DNA of 63,840 nt, filler included, from Octopus bimaculoides (taxonomy: Eukaryota), in assembly GCF_001194135.2 (NCBI RefSeq). It is 6 parts of 6 records of this genome, joined end to end, with 100 filler letters (N's around TTAATTAATTAA, not from the genome) between each part and the next. Parts side by side here need not be neighbours in the genome. Positions count along the whole stretch, not along the records: positions 23,855 to 51,577 come from NC_068996.1; 5 more parts are not named here. One strand, 5' to 3'. This document shows positions 31,088 to 49,039 of the stretch, piece after piece (position 1 is the stretch's first letter; each line of letters starts with the position of its first letter). A model generated the notes under the pieces. That model searched no databases. It was not told where the DNA came from and saw nothing but the letters and a program-made list of their open reading frames with translations. The translations under genes and the position numbers were made by a program.

Positions 31088-32029
31088 AGCAGCGGCAGCA
31101 ATACCACCGTCACCATCACCACTAATACCACCATCACAACTACTACCGCCACAACCACCACCACCACCACCACCACCATCACCACCACCACCACCACCAC
31201 CACCACCACCAAAAATCGTCAGAGTACTCTTGAGAGTAGTGGTGACTAAGGGGTTATTCCACACTGCCTCAGAACTCATGAACTCCGAAGATGGAACCTC
31301 ACTGCTGGATACAATTTAATGTCACACAATCGACAAAACTTCACTAAAACGTTCATTTTTTTTTTACTCCATCAGTCTCAGAACAATGTACAATGCATTC
31401 ATGCTTATAAGGCGCGATAACGCCTCAGATTACTTTAAACCATTGGTTCTCAATAGCGGTTCATATGGCACTTGCTGGGTGAGGTCCATATGGACCTTGG
31501 GAGTTCATATGAAATTTTGTTGTTATATTTCTACAACACAAAAAAAAAAAAATGTTTTAACAATTTTTTTTATACAACTGCTAATAATATTTAATTATAA
31601 AAGTATAATAGGATTTCTAAAACATTGAATGGCTATGAAAGTCCATTCGCGTAAAATAAGAATCAAAGAGGTCAGTAGGCAAAGAATGGTTGAGAACCAC
31701 TTGTTTAAACCAACAAGAAAGGCTACTGATAATAATTTCATTGCCTTCAAATGGTCCGCATTAGAGCTATACCTTACATTCGCCAAACTCTTTGCAATTT
31801 TACCTTCATGCTGTAAGCTCCTTGTCTGCCTTACTAATCATTCTACAACGTTTTTTTCTTCTCCCCAGGGCGAAGGGGTGGAAATCATTATAGCTCTGCT
31901 AACTATCAAGATATTTCTTTCACTCCTTGTATGTCAAGGGTGATGGACACATTCGTTAAGTGAAATACTTACTCTCTTACTTTGACTATCTCTCAGTGTA
32001 TCGTCTCTGTTTGTCTGTCTGTCTATCTC

Positions 32030-32692
32030 AACTTCAATTCTCACCGTTCATATAGTGTAAAGAGAGGAATTGCTCAGTGCTTAAACATCGAGCAAAGAAT
32101 ATAAGCAGCGATCGTGATACCCACCACGAAGAAATGATCAAGTTCAGTAACAATCTATTAAGCAACAGCTACCCACAAAACATACTCTCCACTCCAATTA
32201 TGAAGAAAATAGAGGATGCAACCCATAAAGTGACCACAGTCTGTCTACCCTATGTGAAAGGCCTCCCCGAAAAGATACAAAAGATACTCTGCCCATATGA
32301 CATCAGGACAGTATTCAAGAGCAATACAACACTTCGCGAATATCTCCTTGGAGTAAAACAACCAAGAGAAGAGAATATGACCAAAAACCTGCGTGTACTC
32401 CATGTCATGCAGCTGTGGTAGGTTATACAAAGGTGAAACATGTCGCCCCCTCAAAATAAGGGTAGACGAACATCGTAAAGCTTTAACACGAGGAGATATT
32501 GATAAATTGGGTTTAACTGATCGTGTATGGAAAAATAGAGACCACCTCCCCCTGTGGGATGATGTTAAAATAATAGACAGAGAACACCACTGGAAAATAC
32601 GAAAACTAGAAGAAGCAGCACATATGCTAGGCCACAACAACCACCTAAGCAGATATGAGCAGCATATAGGAACCAGTATTAAGGAAGGATAG
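32030..32692 (+). pseudogene. Penelope-like retroelement fragment: RT C-terminus/thumb, linker and GIY-YIG endonuclease, frameshifted
   Basis: VKRGIAQCL/HRAKNIS...VCLPYVKGLPEKIQKIL..YDIRTVFKS then VYSMSCSCGRLYKGETCRPLKIRVDEH...WKIRKLEEAAHM; at least two frameshifts. Confidence 0.9.
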
Positions 32693-32740
32693 AAAAATAT
32701 TAGATTTATAAGCCCTAAAAGTCACTCCATAGTTGCCTAC

Positions 32741-33020
32741 GGGCATGTGGCGTAATGGTTAAGAGCGCGGGCTACTAACCCCAAGATTCCGAGTTCGATT
32801 CCAGGCAGTGACCTGAATAATAATAATAATAATAACAACAACAACAACATAAAAAAATACCTTAGGAACGAGAACCCAGGTTCGAAATTTTCCCAAGATA
32901 CATGATAAGGCTGGTGGGTATATCAGCCGAAACGTTGTGTTAACAACAAACAAGATGAGGACAAATATCCGTCGAATGTAAATAGTGTACATAATTCTTC
33001 ATCTCTTAAACATAGAACTG
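32741..33020 (+). mobile_element. tRNA-derived SINE family C with hammerhead-bearing tail (HHR relic 32897-32941)
   Basis: tRNA-like head (A box tggcgtaatgg, B box gagttcgattcc; Asn/Ser-like), (AAT/AAC)n, tail gatac-AUGAUAA-ggctg..cagcc-GAAACGUU-gtgtt. Confidence 0.9.
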
Positions 33021-34115
33021 TTTCATGAAAGTAATGTCGTTGCACTTGACAGCAAGCGTTTAACTTTAACTTTCCTCTCAAATCGGAAAAATTTCTTGTG
33101 AAACCACAATATCGTTCACTATCATTTGGTCATGTCTTCTTCAGTCTTTTCTCTGTCACTACTGGCCATTCCCGAACTCATACAGATCTTAGCACTCTTT
33201 CCCACACAGACATCTTCGACACTTCAACTAACCCTCGCTGCTTCCATGAAAAGTTACTATAGCTCTGAGGAGTTTTCGTGAGCATCTCAAATGTAAAACA
33301 ACGTGCCAATACTGCAAAATGAACTTGTTTCACCAGAGACAGAAGATAATCTAGCTTTAATCAATTGCCGATCTTTTGTAAACCTCAGATATAATTCCAT
33401 TAAGGGGTACAACTCCCATATCTTGGTGGGTGCTACTGTTTCACTCAAAATCATATTTGACCAAATTCTATTCAGATATTTTTAAAGACTCACTCATTAA
33501 CAGACCGCACGACGTACACTGATACATGTGTTATCCTCTTGTTTTAGACATGTTTTATTGTGCCACTTCTACATATTTCGTTGTTCAGTTAATGTAGTTG
33601 GTTGCAATGAGTTCCACTTTTATCAAAAACCATCCGATACACATGTCAGTCATTCACTCTCCACTCCAGGTCCTTGTATTTAATAACTTCCCGATCTTTT
33701 CACTCTACGAGAATTTAACACCTCGACGACGTATTTTTTCCTGCAGACGTCAACTTATAAATGTTCAAAATGCAAAAAAAAAAAAAAAAAAAATATATAA
33801 AAAAAAAAAGCAGCTTTATTGATCTCATCGGTTTGGAAGGGTCTGCCAAGGTCATGTGCACCGCCCCTTCATCATGAAAAAGCCATTAACAAAAACAAAA
33901 CACTAAAAAACAAACAAAAAAACAAACAAGCAAAAAACAAAAAAGACAAAAGAAAAATACAAGGAATATAAAAAAAGGTGTAGTCATAAATTAAACATAC
34001 ATGTGCATGTATGTATGTATATATTTGTATGTATATAGATATATATAAATATATATGTATATGTATGCACCTTTATACATATGTGTGTGTGTGTGTATAT
34101 GTATATGCATGTACC

Positions 34116-35551: not shown

Positions 35552-35582
<31 letters not shown>

Positions 35583-39530: not shown

Positions 39531-39936
39531 GCCTTTGCACAACTTCTAACGCTGGAGATGTACTATGGTGTCAGCTGTTCATTACCAGTGAACTAAGGTA
39601 ACACCTCTTATTTTTCGAGCACCTTCCTGAGTATTCGAGCGGTTCACAGCAGTGCTGTTTTCTGCAAGTGCACCACCCCTATTGCATCTCCTATTTGTTC
39701 CACGTACTTCTGGAGATTTTTACTCACTGTTCCCAGGACTCCAACAATTATTGGTAATACTGTTACCTTTTTCATCGACCACAACTGCTTAACCTCTCAA
39801 GCTAACCTGTCATATCTCTCGACTTTTCTTTCTTCCTTATCGCATACCTTGTTGTCAGCTGAGCATGCTATATCTATAATCCAGCATTGTTTGTTTTCTT
39901 TCTCAATTAAGACCATGTCCGGCTTATCTATTATCA
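39531..39936 (-). mobile_element. R4/Dong-type RLE retrotransposon 3' fragment
   Basis: IDKPDMVLIEKENKQCWIIDIACSAD...KVERYDRLA*EVKQLWSMKKVTVLPIIVGVLG...LQKTALL*TARILRKVLEK*; PD..D RLE motif; 3' end abuts (AAT)n, 5' end abuts (GAA)n. Confidence 0.9.
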
Positions 39937-40001
39937 TTCTTCTTCTTCTTCTTCTTCTTCTTCTTCTTCTTCTTCTTCTTCTTCTTCTTCTTCTTCTTCT
40001 T

Positions 40002-40032
<31 letters not shown>

Positions 40033-40239
40033 ATGAAATTTGACTTGTATTATGAAAAAGTTTTTTCATTCTATTTTCGAAACACGACTTACTTCAAGTA
40101 TTACGAAATCAAATTCTAAGGGGAGTACTTGTGAAAAACAATTACAAAAGCTCCCAGACTGAGGGACAGAGAGGAGAAAGAAGCCTGGCCCGAATGCTTA
40201 CAACTGAGTGGTCTCTGTTAAAGATATACCAAAATCTCA

Positions 40240-45736: not shown

Positions 45737-45898
45737 GGCGCATGCGTGGCTGTGTGGTAAGAAGCTTGCTTCCCAACTACATGGTTCTGGGTTCAGTCCC
45801 ACTGCGTGGCACCTTAGGTAGGTGTCTTTTACTCCAACATCGGGCCGACCAAAGCCTTGTGAGTGGATTTGGTAGACGGAAACTGAAAGAAGCCCGTC

Positions 45899-45960
<62 letters not shown>

Positions 45961-46092
45961 TTATGTGTCTGTGTTTGTATATCTAGAAAGAATAACCCCT
46001 GGGGTCGATTTCTTCGACTAAAACCCTTCAAGGCGGTGCTCCATCATGGCCACACTGAAATGACTGAAACTAGTAAAACAATAAAAGAATAA
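45737..46092 (+). mobile_element. SINE family A with internal tail deletion
   Basis: Head, core, (TA)n, then the distal tail only. Confidence 0.88.
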
Positions 46093-46323
46093 AAATCCAT
46101 ATAAGAAGATAATAACATATGTAATCTCATTAATTACATAAGTACTTGCAATTATTATATTACTTTACATGAATATGATGTAGAAATCATTTTGTCAAAC
46201 GTTTATTTAATATGAAAATCAACTCGCTGTTGCTGTTGTAAATATAAACACACAAAAAGAAGTATATACAGTAAAGCATATATAGGTATAAGCAAAGATG
46301 TAATGAATACTCTAACAAATACA

Positions 46324-46534
46324 TAGTTCTATATTTAAGAGATGAGGAATTATGTTCATTATTTACATTATTTACATTTGACGGATATTTGTCATCATCT
46401 TGTTTGTTGTTAACAACGTTTCAGTTGATATACGCTCCAGCCTTCATCAGGTGTCTTGGGGAAATTTCGAACCTGGGTTCTCATTCCTAAGCTACTTTTC
46501 GTTGTTGTTTTTGTTGTTGTTGTTGTTGTTGTTG

Positions 46535-46603
<69 letters not shown>

Positions 46604-46828
46604 TCACTGCCTGAAATCGAACTCGGAATCTCGGGGTTAGTAGCCCGGGTTCTTAACCACTACGCCATATGCCCAATAATAATAACATCGAAAAATACCT
46701 TAGGAATGAGAACCCAGGTTCGAAATTTCCCCAAGACACCTGATGAAGGCTGGAGGGTATATCAGCTGAAACGTTGTGTTAACAACAAGCAAGATGAACA
46801 AATATCCGTCAAATGTAAATAATGTACG
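46324..46828. mobile_element. SINE family C foldback: full copy on minus (46324-46674) fused 5'-to-5' with an inverted tail copy on plus (46675-46828); 10-bp TSD
   Basis: TSD aacaaataca at 46314-46323 and 46829-46838; arms are reverse complements. Confidence 0.9.
46735..46780 (+). ncRNA. Minimal type I hammerhead ribozyme, intact core
   Basis: gacac-CUGAUGA-A-ggctg(gagggtatat)cagct-GAAA-CGU-U-gtgtt; predicted cleavage after 46775. Confidence 0.8.
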
Positions 46829-49039
46829 AACAAATACAATTAAAAATGTTTCAGTGAAAAAAAATTAATAGAGAACATTTACAGTGAGAAAGGACATGTG
46901 TACAGCACCCTTACAAACACCCTTACAAACACACACACACATACACACATACACACACCACACATACGTACACACACATACACTCACTACAGATACGTAG
47001 ACACACATACAGACGTATACACTCACACTACAGATACATATATACACACACACCAGACATATGCACACCTGTAAGCAAACGCGTACCAGAAAGTGATTTA
47101 CTGCTGTAATGTTTGTAGTTTCCAGCTATCTTCCTTACGCGGTCCTCCAGACCAAATATTAATAGTCGCTAGTTATTTCTTTTTTCTTATTTTCTACGTT
47201 TTGTGTCTTTCACCCACCATAAAAGCAAAATTGATTTAAATTGTTCATATTTGAAATGGATTCCCTGACTAGAAGGTTCGTTACGCATTGCATAGTGTGG
47301 TGTGATGTAAGAATTTTAGAAACCGCTGTAGGAATGAAAATATTGAAATATCACTGATCTTTCGGTTCTTTCAAATTTACACACACACACAAAGGCACAC
47401 ACACACACACACACACACGCATAAGACACACTGTCACACAGGCACACACAGACACACATATATCACACACAAATACACACGCACATACCTACATATCAGT
47501 AGAACATTCAGCGCTGCTAAGAATGATAAGTAGCTCTAAATATGCCAGAATATTCTTAATGAAGGCATATTCTGTTTAATCGAACTCTATTAGATTACAC
47601 TCGAAAACTTGTCTTTCATGAAAGAAAGGAATTTGTTCTACGGCATGTTTGTAACAAACCATTATGCAGTGTTATCTACTACATATACGTAGTGAATATA
47701 AAAGATGTATTTCCTTATTTGATTGTGTTTATGTTATATTTCTAATTCATACATATTAAATATAAACATTGTTTTAAGAAATGCAAAAACAGTGTTAGTT
47801 TATTCGGAGAAACAAAAGACAATTATTACTATTAATAATATATCATCTTTTATTCTTGGAATTCTTTAATACTGAAATGAAATTTAAAAATGCGTAGAAA
47901 ACGGAGTACCGAGAAGTAAGTTACTCCAGAATATCATTCTTATAATGTGTGAAGGCCATTATCAAAACAATGCCACACATTCAAATATCGTGAATGCAAT
48001 GAAATTATTATAGATCGTAAAATATGTTTATTTATGCAATACATAATGAAATAATGTTTTAGGTTTTACTAACCAGTACATAAATATAGAGGGATGCAAA
48101 GGAACTGGTACTGGATCACCAGCAATGGAAAACACCTGTGGACTTGGTTGGGTCTACGCATGACGACGCCTCTGGGACCATTAACTTGGAATGATCCCAC
48201 CCCATCAAGTAAAAGCATGAATCCAAGCCTAGCCAGACATAGATATAGTAGTCTTGAGCATTTCGTGTAAAACTGGCCACAAGCAAAACATGATTTCAGT
48301 AGAGGCAGTCCGCAAATTCTCAGTGTTTGTCGGTGGTATTTATTGTCATTACCAATTATAAATGATTTGGAAACAGCTGTCTCTTGTGTAGAACGAAAGA
48401 GTACGCATGTTTTCTTATGAATATTACTGCACTGAGAATAATTGTACTGAGCATAATCTCTTACGAACTCGGTGAGAATAGTTACCCCAATAGCATATGA
48501 TATGCATCTCTTTATCTTCAGTCTTGTATCATTATATTACGAAGCTGATATAATTAGCTCAACAGGATTATTGAGAATAAGAGAGAATCCTATTTTAGCT
48601 GAAGTCTGTTTCATGTGTAGTAAGACGAAATCCGAGTGAACAACAAGGTTTTCGTCAAGGATCAAACTAACTTAGCTTGAAATAAACTGTGGACGTCGTG
48701 ACCCCTTTGTTGTGCAGCAGTTGCGTTAGGTAAAGCAAATTTGTCGACAATTTGCCAAGTGAATAGAAAGGTGATAAAAGATGAGTTATCATCATGAATG
48801 GGTATGAAAAAATGTTGCCAAAAATTTTCCATTACTGCTGAGACATTGTCCACTAGCAGTAGTTTTGCGGTATCAGAGCAATCAGTACAACGCCAAATTT
48901 ATTTGTAAACATTTTTGATAAATATAAAACAATTGCCGAAATCAAAATTAATGTCTAGATTAAATGATTTGGTCAGGAGTAGAAAGCAAGGAACTAAAGA
49001 AAGAGATTAAAAATTGTGTCCAACTTAAGCTTTCTTCAC

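What the first reader, a model, noticed from the sequence alone, without database searches (positions are those of the whole stretch)
46314..46838. Whole SINE-C palindrome inserted in one event: 10-bp TSD and PLE-style inverted 5' copy
Seen: aacaaataca flanks both outer ends. The minus copy is complete; the plus arm starts exactly at its 5' end, repeats ~155 bp of the tail, and lacks the last ~30 nt. Established: PLE insertions often carry an inverted partial terminal repeat at the 5' end, whereas LINE twin priming inverts sequence without duplicating the 3' tail. Inference: this is a mechanistic footprint of Penelope-type integration acting on a SINE RNA.
Basis: partly seen in the sequence, partly recalled or inferred. 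Interest (0 to 1): 0.8.

Follow-up and report, generated by a model that had tools for sequence, protein, structure and literature searches.

The report
Penelope-type inverted double insertion, octopus SINE
A short octopus retroelement sits in the genome as a head-to-head inverted pair flanked by one 10-bp target duplication, which is the known insertion footprint of Penelope-like retrotransposons; the short element turns out to be the 3' end module of such a Penelope-like element.

Summary
AACAAATACA flanks the composite at 46314-46323 and 46829-46838. A complete 351-bp unit lies on the minus strand (46324-46674): tRNA-like head, (TAA)n(CAA)n, body, tail. A 154-bp plus-strand arm (46675-46828) starts exactly at that unit's 5' end, repeats the body and stops 31 nt short of the family's 3' end.

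- The window is octopus DNA.
- The same unit, head included, follows the stop codon of a Penelope-like element (PLE) ORF in 4 of 4 PLE 3' ends seen. One is in the window (32741-33021) and three are in O. vulgaris and O. sinensis loci.
- The body carries a PLE-type minimal hammerhead motif.
- All ten copies examined end at one of two sites 31 nt apart.
- Each of four head-to-head composites has one tailed and one tail-less end. Three have clean 9-11 bp TSDs and the fourth a degenerate ~12-bp one.

This matches the published PLE architecture: an inverted 5'-truncated copy, a ~31-bp tail at one end, 8-10 bp TSDs, and two reverse-transcription start sites with both DNA strands extended.

It is a clean new example of a known kind. 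The possibly new element is a tRNA-headed, SINE-like PLE derivative in octopus. The empty site and a genome-wide census could not be obtained.

The parts
46314..46323 (.). Left target-site duplication AACAAATACA
   Evidence: Exact 10/10 match to 46829-46838. The last 1-3 nt may overlap the element end (microhomology with ...ACTGT).
46324..46353 (-). Copy A, 3' 'tail': the 31-nt family tail, present only on this arm
   Evidence: tail consensus positions 1-29 map to 46353-46325 at 100%; the tail is absent from arm B.
46354..46363 (-). Copy A, 9-nt extra repeat (aataatgaa) at the body/tail boundary, a marker of the 'long' subfamily
   Evidence: A diverged homologous insert is present in L001_frag, L002_a and L002_frag. 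It is absent from arm B, copy2, L001_b and L002_PLE.
46364..46501 (-). Copy A, body (left arm of the palindrome)
   Evidence: body consensus 4-143, 94%.
46410..46455 (-). Minimal hammerhead-like motif in copy A, with a 2-nt deletion in the helix I 3' strand
   Evidence: core at 46415-46450.
46502..46599 (-). Copy A, internal microsatellite: (TAA)n(CAA)n on the element strand, expanded to about 100 bp
46600..46674 (-). Copy A, tRNA-like head with an A box (TGGCGTAGTGG) and a B box (GAGTTCGATTTC). This is the 5' end of the unit.
   Evidence: head consensus 1-75, 94.7%. For the same head in copy2, Rfam tRNA scores only 15.7 bits. ARAGORN finds nothing.
46675..46828 (+). Arm B: an inverted, 5'-truncated, tail-less copy. 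It consists of (TAA)3, then body 46686-46827, then 1 extra g.
   Evidence: body 1-144, 97%. It ends at the recurrent tail-less terminus.
46735..46784 (+). Minimal hammerhead-like motif in arm B: GACAC CUGAUGA A GGCUGG..UCAGCU GAA ACGU U|GUGUU
   Evidence: core at 46740-46775.
46829..46838 (.). Right target-site duplication AACAAATACA
32015..32692 (+). 5'-truncated, frameshifted PLE ORF remnant (RT C-terminal region plus a GIY-YIG-like endonuclease motif), abutting (TGTC)n at its 5' end
   Evidence: 68% identity to O. sinensis P0037 and 78% to O. vulgaris P0103. Relatives carry RVT_1.
32693..33021 (+). PLE 3' region equal to a second full copy of the unit: 48-nt linker, head 32741-32815, (TAA)n(CAA)n, body 32848-32990, tail 32991-33021

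Best explanation
The 525-bp composite is the product of a single Penelope-like-element (PLE) type retrotransposition of a short, non-autonomous unit. The unit consists of a tRNA-like head, a (TAA)n(CAA)n tract, a body carrying a minimal hammerhead, and a 31-nt tail. This unit is the 3' terminal module of an octopus PLE.

Proposed steps (mostly inferred):
1. The PLE endonuclease cut the two strands of the target 10 bp apart.
2. The plus-strand 3'-OH at ...AACAAATACA primed reverse transcription at the distal start site (...GAACUGU). Synthesis ran to the 5' end of the RNA and gave the complete copy A.
3. The minus-strand 3'-OH primed at the proximal start site 31 nt upstream (...AAUAAUGUAC), probably on a second RNA molecule. 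Synthesis ran about 150 nt and stopped in the microsatellite, giving arm B.
4. The two cDNA 3' ends were then joined head to head, most simply by an end-to-end template jump of one RT onto the other cDNA, which also provides second-strand synthesis.
5. Fill-in of the 10-bp stagger gave the TSD.

Shown here: the anatomy, the link to a PLE, the two discrete 3' termini, the one-tail-per-composite rule, and the TSD.
Inferred: the order of events, the use of two templates, and the template jump.
For: Anatomy and TSD. TSD chance is at most 0.1-0.2%.

Link to a PLE:
- The unit follows the PLE ORF stop through a conserved linker in 4 of 4 PLE 3' ends (window, L001, and twice in L002).
- The ORF relatives are RT-bearing, PLE-like proteins of Octopus.

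Hammerhead motif:
- It is found only in unit copies, with 0 matches expected by chance.
- The consensus MFE forms helices I and II.
- The features match PMC4209133.

Termini and composites:
- Two discrete 3' termini lie 31 nt apart in all ten copies.
- Each of four head-to-head composites has one tailed and one tail-less end.
- TSDs are 10, 11, 9 and about 12 (degenerate) bp.

Two templates: copy A carries the 'long' subfamily 9-nt insert, while arm B ends with the 'short' form ...aataatgtac.

Literature:
- Inverted 5'-truncated copy plus a tail at one end (PMC8557442).
- 9- and 10-bp TSDs and a 31-bp tail on one of the inverted pLTRs (PMC3846280).
- Both strands cleaved and extended, with two RT start sites that delimit the tail (PMC11167929).
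Against: - No empty site could be retrieved, so the single event is inferred from the shared TSD and the recurrent architecture.
- The sample is small: ten copies and four composites in about 65 kb, and the loci were fetched through PLE genes, so they are biased towards PLE neighbourhoods.
- The arms are not more similar to each other (95.7%) than arm B is to a copy from another species (96.5%). Sequence identity therefore gives no independent support for a common origin.
- Only one shared derived site was found, and it is a CpG transition.
- The 9-nt difference between the arms could be a later slippage event rather than evidence for two templates.
- Rfam finds no hammerhead, and covariation cannot be assessed with seven near-identical copies.
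- Pfam does not detect a GIY-YIG domain in the ORF or its relatives. The endonuclease is recognised only by motif and by my own knowledge of PLEs.
Confidence: 0.8

Rival explanations
1. The event is the same PLE-type single insertion, but the inverted arm arose by self-priming (snap-back) of one cDNA or RNA rather than by priming on both target strands. The endonuclease later trimmed the tail from one end.
For: - Arkhipova et al. 2013 proposed self-priming for PLEs because inverted junctions often carry palindromes (PMC3846280).
- Craig et al. attribute the tail to EN-mediated resolution (PMC8557442).
- Small junction palindromes or hairpin-like inversions do occur in L002: 7176-7209 and 7599-7650.
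- L001 has a head-to-head junction at exact head 5' ends, near 12075-12090.
Against: - The A/B junction in the window has no palindrome beyond the arms. Arm B starts inside the microsatellite and skips the 75-nt head, which a snap-back from the cDNA 3' end would copy first.
- Arm B ends at a discrete site shared by four independent tail-less ends.
- Arm B lacks the 9-nt insert of copy A.
- In vitro, a PLE extends both strands from two start sites (PMC11167929).
Confidence: 0.12
2. Two independent insertions: an older 5'- and 3'-truncated plus-strand copy, and a later full-length minus-strand copy that happened to land exactly at its 5' edge.
For: - The arms differ by about 4-8% and by a 9-nt indel.
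- PLEs are said to insert into or next to existing copies (PMC6765202).
Against: - The only TSD flanks the whole composite. Neither arm has its own, and there is no tgtatttgtt next to A's head.
- The private changes, 7 against 3, do not differ significantly.
- The same tailed/tail-less pairing recurs in four composites.
- A 3'-truncated retroposon ending at exactly the recurrent site has no explanation in this model.
Confidence: 0.04
3. The palindrome existed beforehand as a composite master or a segmental copy, and was moved here as a unit.
For: The TSD only shows that the whole block arrived together.
Against: - No second copy with this junction exists in about 65 kb of octopus sequence.
- Every other composite has a different junction.
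- A search with the junction-spanning ORF found nothing, although that database barely holds such ORFs.
Confidence: 0.03
4. A foldback/MITE-type DNA transposon with about 150-bp terminal inverted repeats and a 10-bp TSD, or alternatively an assembly or foldback-read artefact.
For: Long inverted arms and a 10-bp TSD resemble Mutator/Foldback-like MITEs. That resemblance rests on my own knowledge.
Against: - The ends are asymmetric: 31-40 nt of tail on one side only.
- The same sequence occurs unidirectionally as the 3' end of PLE ORFs.
- The arms are 4-8% diverged, so this is not a chimeric-read palindrome.
- The centre is a tRNA-like head plus a microsatellite, not a loop.
Confidence: 0.01

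Closest known systems
Canonical EN+ Penelope-like element insertions (Penelope/Poseidon-type; A. vaga Pen2a_Av and the Pen2 derivative)
   Same: - A head-to-head inverted 5'-truncated copy next to the main copy.
- A ~31-bp tail on only one of the inverted ends.
- An 8-10 bp TSD around the whole structure.
- A hammerhead motif in the repeated terminal region.
- A preference for AT-rich or simple-repeat targets.
(PMC3846280; PMC8557442; PMC4209133.)
   Different: - The main copy here is a 351-bp non-coding unit that starts at a tRNA-like head, not an ORF-bearing element.
- No direct pLTR (partial tandem) is present in this insertion.
- The terminal module contains a (TAA)n(CAA)n tract.
PAc (Poseidon of Anolis carolinensis) in vitro TPRT
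   Same: Both target strands are cleaved and extended. There are two adjacent internal RT start sites, and their spacing equals the genomic tail (PMC11167929). The two 3' termini 31 nt apart and the two oppositely primed copies here fit this directly.
   Different: - In PAc the start sites lie inside the 5' part of the ORF, next to the pLTR.
- Here they lie about 300 nt downstream of the ORF stop.
- Nothing was tested biochemically here.
LINE-1 twin priming
   Same: The geometry is the same: an inverted 5' segment, a sense 3' segment, and one TSD around both. Both nicked strands act as primers. This comparison rests on my own knowledge.
   Different: Twin priming inverts an upstream part of the same RNA and does not duplicate the 3' region. 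Here 153 nt are present in both arms, which implies two templates or double copying.
Schistosome Sm-alpha/Sj-alpha SINE-like elements and metazoan non-LTR retrozymes
   Same: - They are short non-autonomous retroelements.
- The schistosome elements combine a Pol III-type promoter with a hammerhead (PMC6765202).
- Retrozymes may depend on PLEs (PMC8969392).
- In S. mansoni, paired minimal hammerheads 100-700 bp apart on opposite strands were noted (PMC4209133).
   Different: - Those elements carry canonical type I hammerheads and occur as tandem repeats or circRNA-forming units.
- This unit has the PLE minimal type, is dispersed, and is identical to the 3' end of its autonomous PLE, head included.
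Non-autonomous Chlamys/PLE derivatives (e.g. MRC1 of Chlamydomonas)
   Same: They are non-autonomous elements that share the 3' end with an autonomous PLE and show PLE-type insertion structures (PMC8557442).
   Different: They belong to a different PLE clade (N-terminal EN, no canonical hammerhead) and have no tRNA-like head.

Membership tests
Penelope-like element (autonomous partner) | A single ORF with an RT related to PLE/TERT RTs | tested here: met
   - The window ORF remnant at 32015-32692 aligns with Octopus proteins.
- The longer L002 copy contains YVDD.
- Relatives carry RVT_1 and PF26215.
- There are weak PDB hits to group II intron-like RT and TERT.
- No full-length octopus copy was seen.
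Penelope-like element (autonomous partner) | A C-terminal GIY-YIG endonuclease | tested here: inconclusive
   The motif ..CVYSMSCSCGRLYKGETCRPLKIRVDEHRKA.. is at the C-terminus, and I recognise it as the PLE GIY-YIG/Zn-finger-like motif from my own knowledge. Pfam gives no GIY-YIG hit for the window ORF or for P0121, P0037 or P0001.
Penelope-like element (terminal region) | A hammerhead ribozyme motif (minimal type I: no helix III, an extra nucleotide after A9, G10.1-C11.1, palindromic 15.x-16.x) | tested here: met
   - The motif is present in 5 of 7 aligned copies with an intact core.
- 0 matches are expected by chance.
- The MFE forms helices I and II.
- This holds at motif level only. Rfam models do not detect it, there is no covariation, and no cleavage assay was done.
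PLE insertion architecture | An inverted 5'-truncated copy adjoining the 5' end, head to head | tested here: met
   Window 46324-46674(-) with 46675-46828(+). Three further cases are in L001 and L002.
PLE insertion architecture | A 30-40 bp 'tail' present at only one end of the insertion | tested here: met
   The tail is 31 nt. All four composites have exactly one tailed end, and the tail-less ends cluster within about 8 nt.
PLE insertion architecture | A short TSD around the whole structure | tested here: met
   10 bp here, 11 bp in L001, 9 bp in L002, and a degenerate ~12 bp in L002. Chance is at most 0.2%.
PLE insertion architecture | A direct pseudo-LTR (partial tandem) | tested here: not met
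   No direct tandem partial copy occurs in the composite or in the other copies seen. This feature is frequent but not obligatory for truncated insertions.
tRNA-derived SINE | Internal Pol III A and B boxes in a tRNA-related head | tested here: inconclusive
   - The A box TGGCGTAGTGG fits TRGCNNAGTGG.
- The B box GAGTTCGATTCC fits GGTTCGANNCC at 10 of 11 positions (consensus as quoted in PMC8969392).
- Rfam tRNA scores only 15.7 bits against a threshold of 29.
- ARAGORN finds nothing, even at relaxed settings.
tRNA-derived SINE | A discrete 5' end at the head, indicating its own transcript | tested here: inconclusive
   Three copies in two loci begin at head nt 1 (+/-2): window copy A and both L001 12075-12090 copies. 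All are inside head-to-head composites. No solitary full-length copy was seen in 65 kb.
tRNA-derived SINE | Only the 3' part is shared with the autonomous partner | tested here: not met
   The whole unit, head included, lies in the PLE 3' region in 4 of 4 PLE 3' ends. It works like a SINE, but it is equally a 5'-truncated or processed PLE 3' module.
tRNA-derived SINE | High copy number, dispersed | not testable with these tools
   No octopus genome can be searched by DNA here. The scans of metagenome, genome and viral collections gave only chance hits or none.
LINE twin priming | The inverted segment is a different, upstream part of the same RNA, with no duplication | tested here: not met
   153 nt are duplicated in both arms.
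Foldback/MITE DNA transposon | Symmetric terminal inverted repeats reaching both ends | tested here: not met
   The left end has 31-40 nt that are absent from the right end. The sequence occurs unidirectionally after PLE ORFs.

The most novel reading that the evidence does not exclude
An octopus PLE carries a complete Pol III-type (tRNA-like) head in its 3' UTR. This head could release a ~250-350 nt RNA, either as an internal Pol III transcript or through tRNA-like 5' processing. That RNA would retain the minimal hammerhead and both RT start sites, and would be mobilised by the PLE machinery as a true SINE. Part of the large, mostly 'unclassified' octopus SINE fraction would then be PLE-driven rather than LINE-driven. 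The composites, whose arms carry different subfamily markers, would record dual-strand priming on two separate RNA molecules held in one, possibly dimeric, RNP.
Probability: 0.3. Interest if true: 0.65.

Novelty: new member of a known kind. Interest (0 to 1): 0.42.

Why it matters
PLE integration is the least understood retrotransposition mechanism. Its genomic signatures (inverted copy, one-sided tail) were linked to biochemistry only in 2024.

A short, abundant, non-coding PLE derivative would give many compact insertions in which both 3' termini, the junction and the TSD can be read in a few hundred bases. That makes it a convenient natural data set for three questions:
- dual-strand priming against self-priming;
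- mapping the RT start sites;
- whether two RNA templates are used.

It would also matter for octopus genome annotation. There, SINEs make up about 11-12% of the genome and most families are unclassified (PMC13282606). Palindromic PLE-type insertions can also be mis-called as MITEs or break assemblies.

Tried and rejected
- Rfam at a permissive E-value over 45800-47400 and 32700-33060 found no hammerhead. The only tRNA hit was sub-threshold.
- ARAGORN found no tRNA, even at relaxed thresholds on the consensus head.
- Pfam gave no GIY-YIG hit for the ORF remnants or their relatives.
- A search with the junction-spanning ORF (46601-46822), meant to find other composites with the same junction, found no candidate.
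- The third protein search, with the L002 RT region, returned only one Octopus protein that was already held. No more octopus DNA could be fetched that way.
- L003, an ENA contig whose PLE is about 60% identical, has no copy of the unit and no tRNA-like head after its ORF.
- Exact-pattern scans gave two chance hits in metagenome contigs. The scans of prokaryotic genomes and viral contigs gave none.
- Arm-to-arm identity as a test of common origin is not discriminating.
- Covariation support for the hammerhead cannot be assessed, because there are too few and too similar copies.
- A monomeric canonical hammerhead was considered and rejected, because there is no helix III or loop 3.
- A target/element similarity upstream of the TSD (10 of 16 matches, background frequency 0.4%) was not seen when the other two clean composites were compared by eye, so it stays a curiosity.
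- The TSD of the window's PLE copy (32015-33021) could not be defined, because its 5' end runs into (TGTC)n.
Full report
**1. What is in the sequence**

The decamer AACAAATACA lies at 46314-46323 and again at 46829-46838. Its only other occurrence in the 27.7-kb piece is at 35581. Two copies of one repeat lie between them, head to head.

Copy A is on the minus strand at 46324-46674 (351 bp). Read on its own strand it has these parts:
- A 75-nt head, GGGCATATGGCGTAGTGGTTAAG...CAGTGACCTG, at 46674-46600.
- A (TAA)n(CAA)n tract of about 100 bp.
- A 140-nt body, at 46501-46364.
- A 9-nt extra repeat.
- A tail, ...CATAATTCCTCATCTCTTAAATATAGAACTA, at 46353-46324.

Arm B is on the plus strand at 46675-46828. 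It starts at the base next to A's first nucleotide with aataataataa. It then repeats the body (46686-46827) and ends ...AAATGTAAATAATGTAC+g directly against the right decamer.

The arms are 91.6% identical counting gaps and 95.7% in ungapped columns.

A 10-mer direct repeat abutting both ends, with up to 3 nt of slack, occurs at 0.1-0.2% of random positions in this microsatellite-rich DNA. The decamer is not a simple repeat.

**2. What the repeat is**

A second full copy of the unit lies at 32741-33021 on the plus strand. It starts 49 bp after the stop codon of a frameshifted ORF remnant at about 32015-32692. The translation of that remnant reads ...LPYVKGLPEKIQKILCPYDIRTVFKSNTTLREYL...CVYSMSCSCGRLYKGETCRPLKIRVDEHRKA....

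This remnant matches proteins of Octopus sinensis (P0037, 68%) and O. vulgaris (P0103, 78%). It also matches hundreds of RT-bearing relatives carrying RVT_1 and PF26215. The longer L002 copy contains the YVDD motif.

From my own knowledge, the C-terminal motif is the GIY-YIG endonuclease motif of Penelope-like elements (PLEs). Pfam does not detect it.

I fetched the two Octopus loci, L001 from O. vulgaris and L002 from O. sinensis. Every PLE 3' end seen shows the same order: end of ORF, a conserved linker, then the head. That holds for four out of four, namely the window copy, L001 10412, L002 10819 and L002 7449.

So 'SINE-C' is the 3' terminal module of an octopus PLE. The window is octopus DNA, since unit copies are 91-96% identical across the three sources.

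**3. The hammerhead motif**

The body contains GACAC-CUGAUGA-A-GGCUGG-(8 nt)-UCAGCC-GAA-ACGU-U|GUGUU. The motif has:
- the CUGAUGA and GAA cores;
- a G10.1-C11.1 pair;
- a 6-bp helix II;
- a 5-bp helix I;
- a palindromic ACGU at positions 15.1-16.1, with no loop 3.

These are the features Cervera and De la Pena list for the minimal, dimer-dependent hammerheads of metazoan PLEs (PMC4209133).

The pattern occurs only in unit copies, twice in the window (once in each arm) and three times in the loci. Zero matches are expected by chance. The minimum-free-energy fold of the consensus forms helices I and II.

This is a match at motif level only:
- Rfam's hammerhead models, which need helix III, find nothing.
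- Seven near-identical copies give no covariation.
- Both arms of the composite have U instead of C at 11.1.
- Copy A has a 2-nt deletion in helix I, and copy2 has a mutated core.

The same paper noted pairs of minimal hammerheads 100-700 bp apart on opposite strands in Schistosoma. That is what this composite looks like.

**4. The tail and the recurrence of the architecture**

All ten copies and fragments in the window, L001 and L002 were aligned at their 3' ends. They fall into two classes.
- Six copies end ...ATAGAACTGT, with small variations.
- Four copies end 31 nt earlier, within an 8-nt window: ...AATAAT, ...AATAATGTA, ...AATAATGTAC and ...AATAATGTAAATAA. Each is followed at once by flank or TSD.

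Four head-to-head composites are present:

| Composite | Tailed copy | Tail-less copy | TSD |
|---|---|---|---|
| Window 46314-46838 | copy A (-), 351 bp | arm B (+), 154 bp | AACAAATACA, 10 bp |
| L001 9970-10648 | 80-nt minus-strand fragment | 5'-truncated PLE (+) | ATAATTTTAAA, 11 bp |
| L002 9166-11062 | 1.8-kb PLE (+) | 53-nt fragment (-) | ATAAGTACC, 9 bp, with 8 extra nt after the tail |
| L002 6889-7676 | minus-strand copy | plus-strand PLE copy | degenerate, about 12 bp |

Each composite has exactly one tailed end and one tail-less end. The junctions all differ, so these structures were formed anew at each insertion.

A fifth locus, L001 11801-12300, joins two heads at their exact 5' ends inside a (TAA)n target.

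**5. Comparison with what is known**

The published description of PLE insertions matches point by point.
- In Adineta vaga, inserts bounded by inverted pLTRs have 9- and 10-bp TSDs. They have a 31-bp tail on one of the inverted pLTRs, and the inverted one is 37 bp shorter (PMC3846280).
- In vitro, the anole PLE protein cleaves and extends both target strands. It starts reverse transcription at two adjacent internal sites whose spacing corresponds to the genomic tail (PMC11167929).

Twin priming has the same geometry but does not duplicate the 3' region. Here 153 nt are present twice.

**6. Most likely mechanism**

The following sequence of events is inferred:
1. A staggered cut is made 10 bp apart.
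2. One 3'-OH primes at the distal start site, and synthesis runs to the RNA 5' end. This gives copy A.
3. The other 3'-OH primes at the proximal start site, and synthesis stops in the microsatellite. This gives arm B.
4. The two cDNA ends are joined without homology. There is no complementarity between ...CATATGCCC-3' and ...TTATTATT-3'. The simplest route is an end-to-end template jump, which also supplies the second strand.

A hint that two different RNAs were used comes from a 9-nt insert at the body/tail boundary. Copy A carries it, and L001_frag, L002_a and L002_frag share it in diverged form. Arm B ends with the uninterrupted form ...AATAATGTAC. A later slippage event cannot be excluded.

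The older self-priming model (PMC3846280) fits less well, for three reasons:
- Arm B skips the head.
- Arm B ends at the recurrent proximal site.
- Arm B lacks A's insert.

Junction palindromes of the kind that motivated the self-priming model do occur in L002.

**7. Is it a SINE?**

The head has an exact A box and a B box matching at 10 of 11 positions, at normal spacing. It scores only 15.7 bits with the Rfam tRNA model (threshold 29) and is not called by ARAGORN.

Three copies start at head nt 1 (+/-2). That is hard to get by random 5' truncation of a multi-kb element, and it suggests a discrete RNA 5' end from Pol III initiation or tRNA-like processing.

Against this, all three copies are inside composites. 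No solitary full-length copy was seen in 65 kb. The whole unit, not just its tail, is contained in the PLE.

So the unit behaves like a SINE, but on present evidence it is equally well described as a processed or truncated PLE 3' module.

I found no paper that links octopus SINEs to PLEs. Retrozymes and non-autonomous Chlamys elements are the published precedents for PLE-dependent short elements.

**8. What could not be done**

- No octopus genome is searchable by DNA with these tools, so there is no empty site and no genome-wide census.
- The sample is small and was fetched through PLE genes.
- Arm-to-arm identity does not discriminate. Arm B is 96.5% identical to an O. vulgaris copy and 95.7% identical to copy A.
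- Private changes number 7 in A and 3 in B, which is not a significant difference.
- There is one shared derived CpG-to-TpG change.

**9. Verdict**

I put about 0.8 on a single PLE-type event.

The thing itself is a textbook PLE insertion architecture in a compact form, so it is a new member of a known kind. The possibly new aspect is a tRNA-headed, hammerhead-bearing PLE 3' module acting as a SINE in octopus, together with the hint of two templates. This deserves the census described in the decisive next steps.

Noticed in passing
window 45745-46080 (+): A different, tRNA-derived octopus SINE lies about 230 bp upstream of the composite. It reads ...ggctgtgtggtaagaagcttgcttcccaac...ggtagacggaaactgaaagaagcccgtcg. 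An internal (TA)n follows at 45896-45960, and then a 3' part ending ...catggccacactgaaatgactgaaac. The (TA)n tract produced spurious Rfam miRNA and pestivirus-UTR hits.
   Followed up: no
window 46298-46313 vs 46813-46828: The 16 nt upstream of the left TSD (ATGTAATGAATACTCT) match the last 16 nt of arm B (ATGTAAATAATGTACG) at 10 of 16 positions, in exact register. The background frequency is 0.4%. This could be target/element microhomology at the proximal RT start site. Comparing the other two clean composites by eye showed nothing similar.
   Followed up: partly
L001 11801-12300: Two unit copies are joined at their exact head 5' ends (gccatatgccc-gt-gggcatagcgg). Both heads carry internal deletions. 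The plus-strand copy consists of the head and microsatellite only. The target appears to be a (TAA)n tract, as if priming occurred inside the element's own (UAA)n.
   Followed up: partly
L002 7176-7209 and 7599-7650: There is a 34-nt near-perfect palindrome at the inversion junction, made of 17 nt of PLE ORF and its inverted copy. A second hairpin-like inverted duplication lies inside the body of the same copy. Both look like template-switch or self-priming scars.
   Followed up: no
L001 10001-10363 (O. vulgaris gene model, P0103): The annotated 'hypothetical protein' starts inside the inverted tail fragment and reads across the inversion junction into the PLE endonuclease remnant. It is therefore an annotation artefact of a composite PLE insertion.
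   Followed up: partly
window 32015-32050: The 5' truncation point of the window's PLE remnant abuts a (TGTC)n tract. This is in line with the reported microsatellite bias of PLE insertions. No TSD could be defined.
   Followed up: partly
window 39797-40069 (-): An ORF contains ...MIIDKPDMVLIEKENKQCWIIDIACSADNKVCDKEERKVERYDRLA after an arginine run. It looks to me like the C-terminal end of another retrotransposon ORF. Pfam gave only spurious low-complexity hits.
   Followed up: partly
window 25226-49696 (eight N runs): The piece has 3,596 N in eight gaps. Several of them are bordered by microsatellites, such as (TA)n and (AC)n. Repeat copies may be hidden in these gaps.
   Followed up: no
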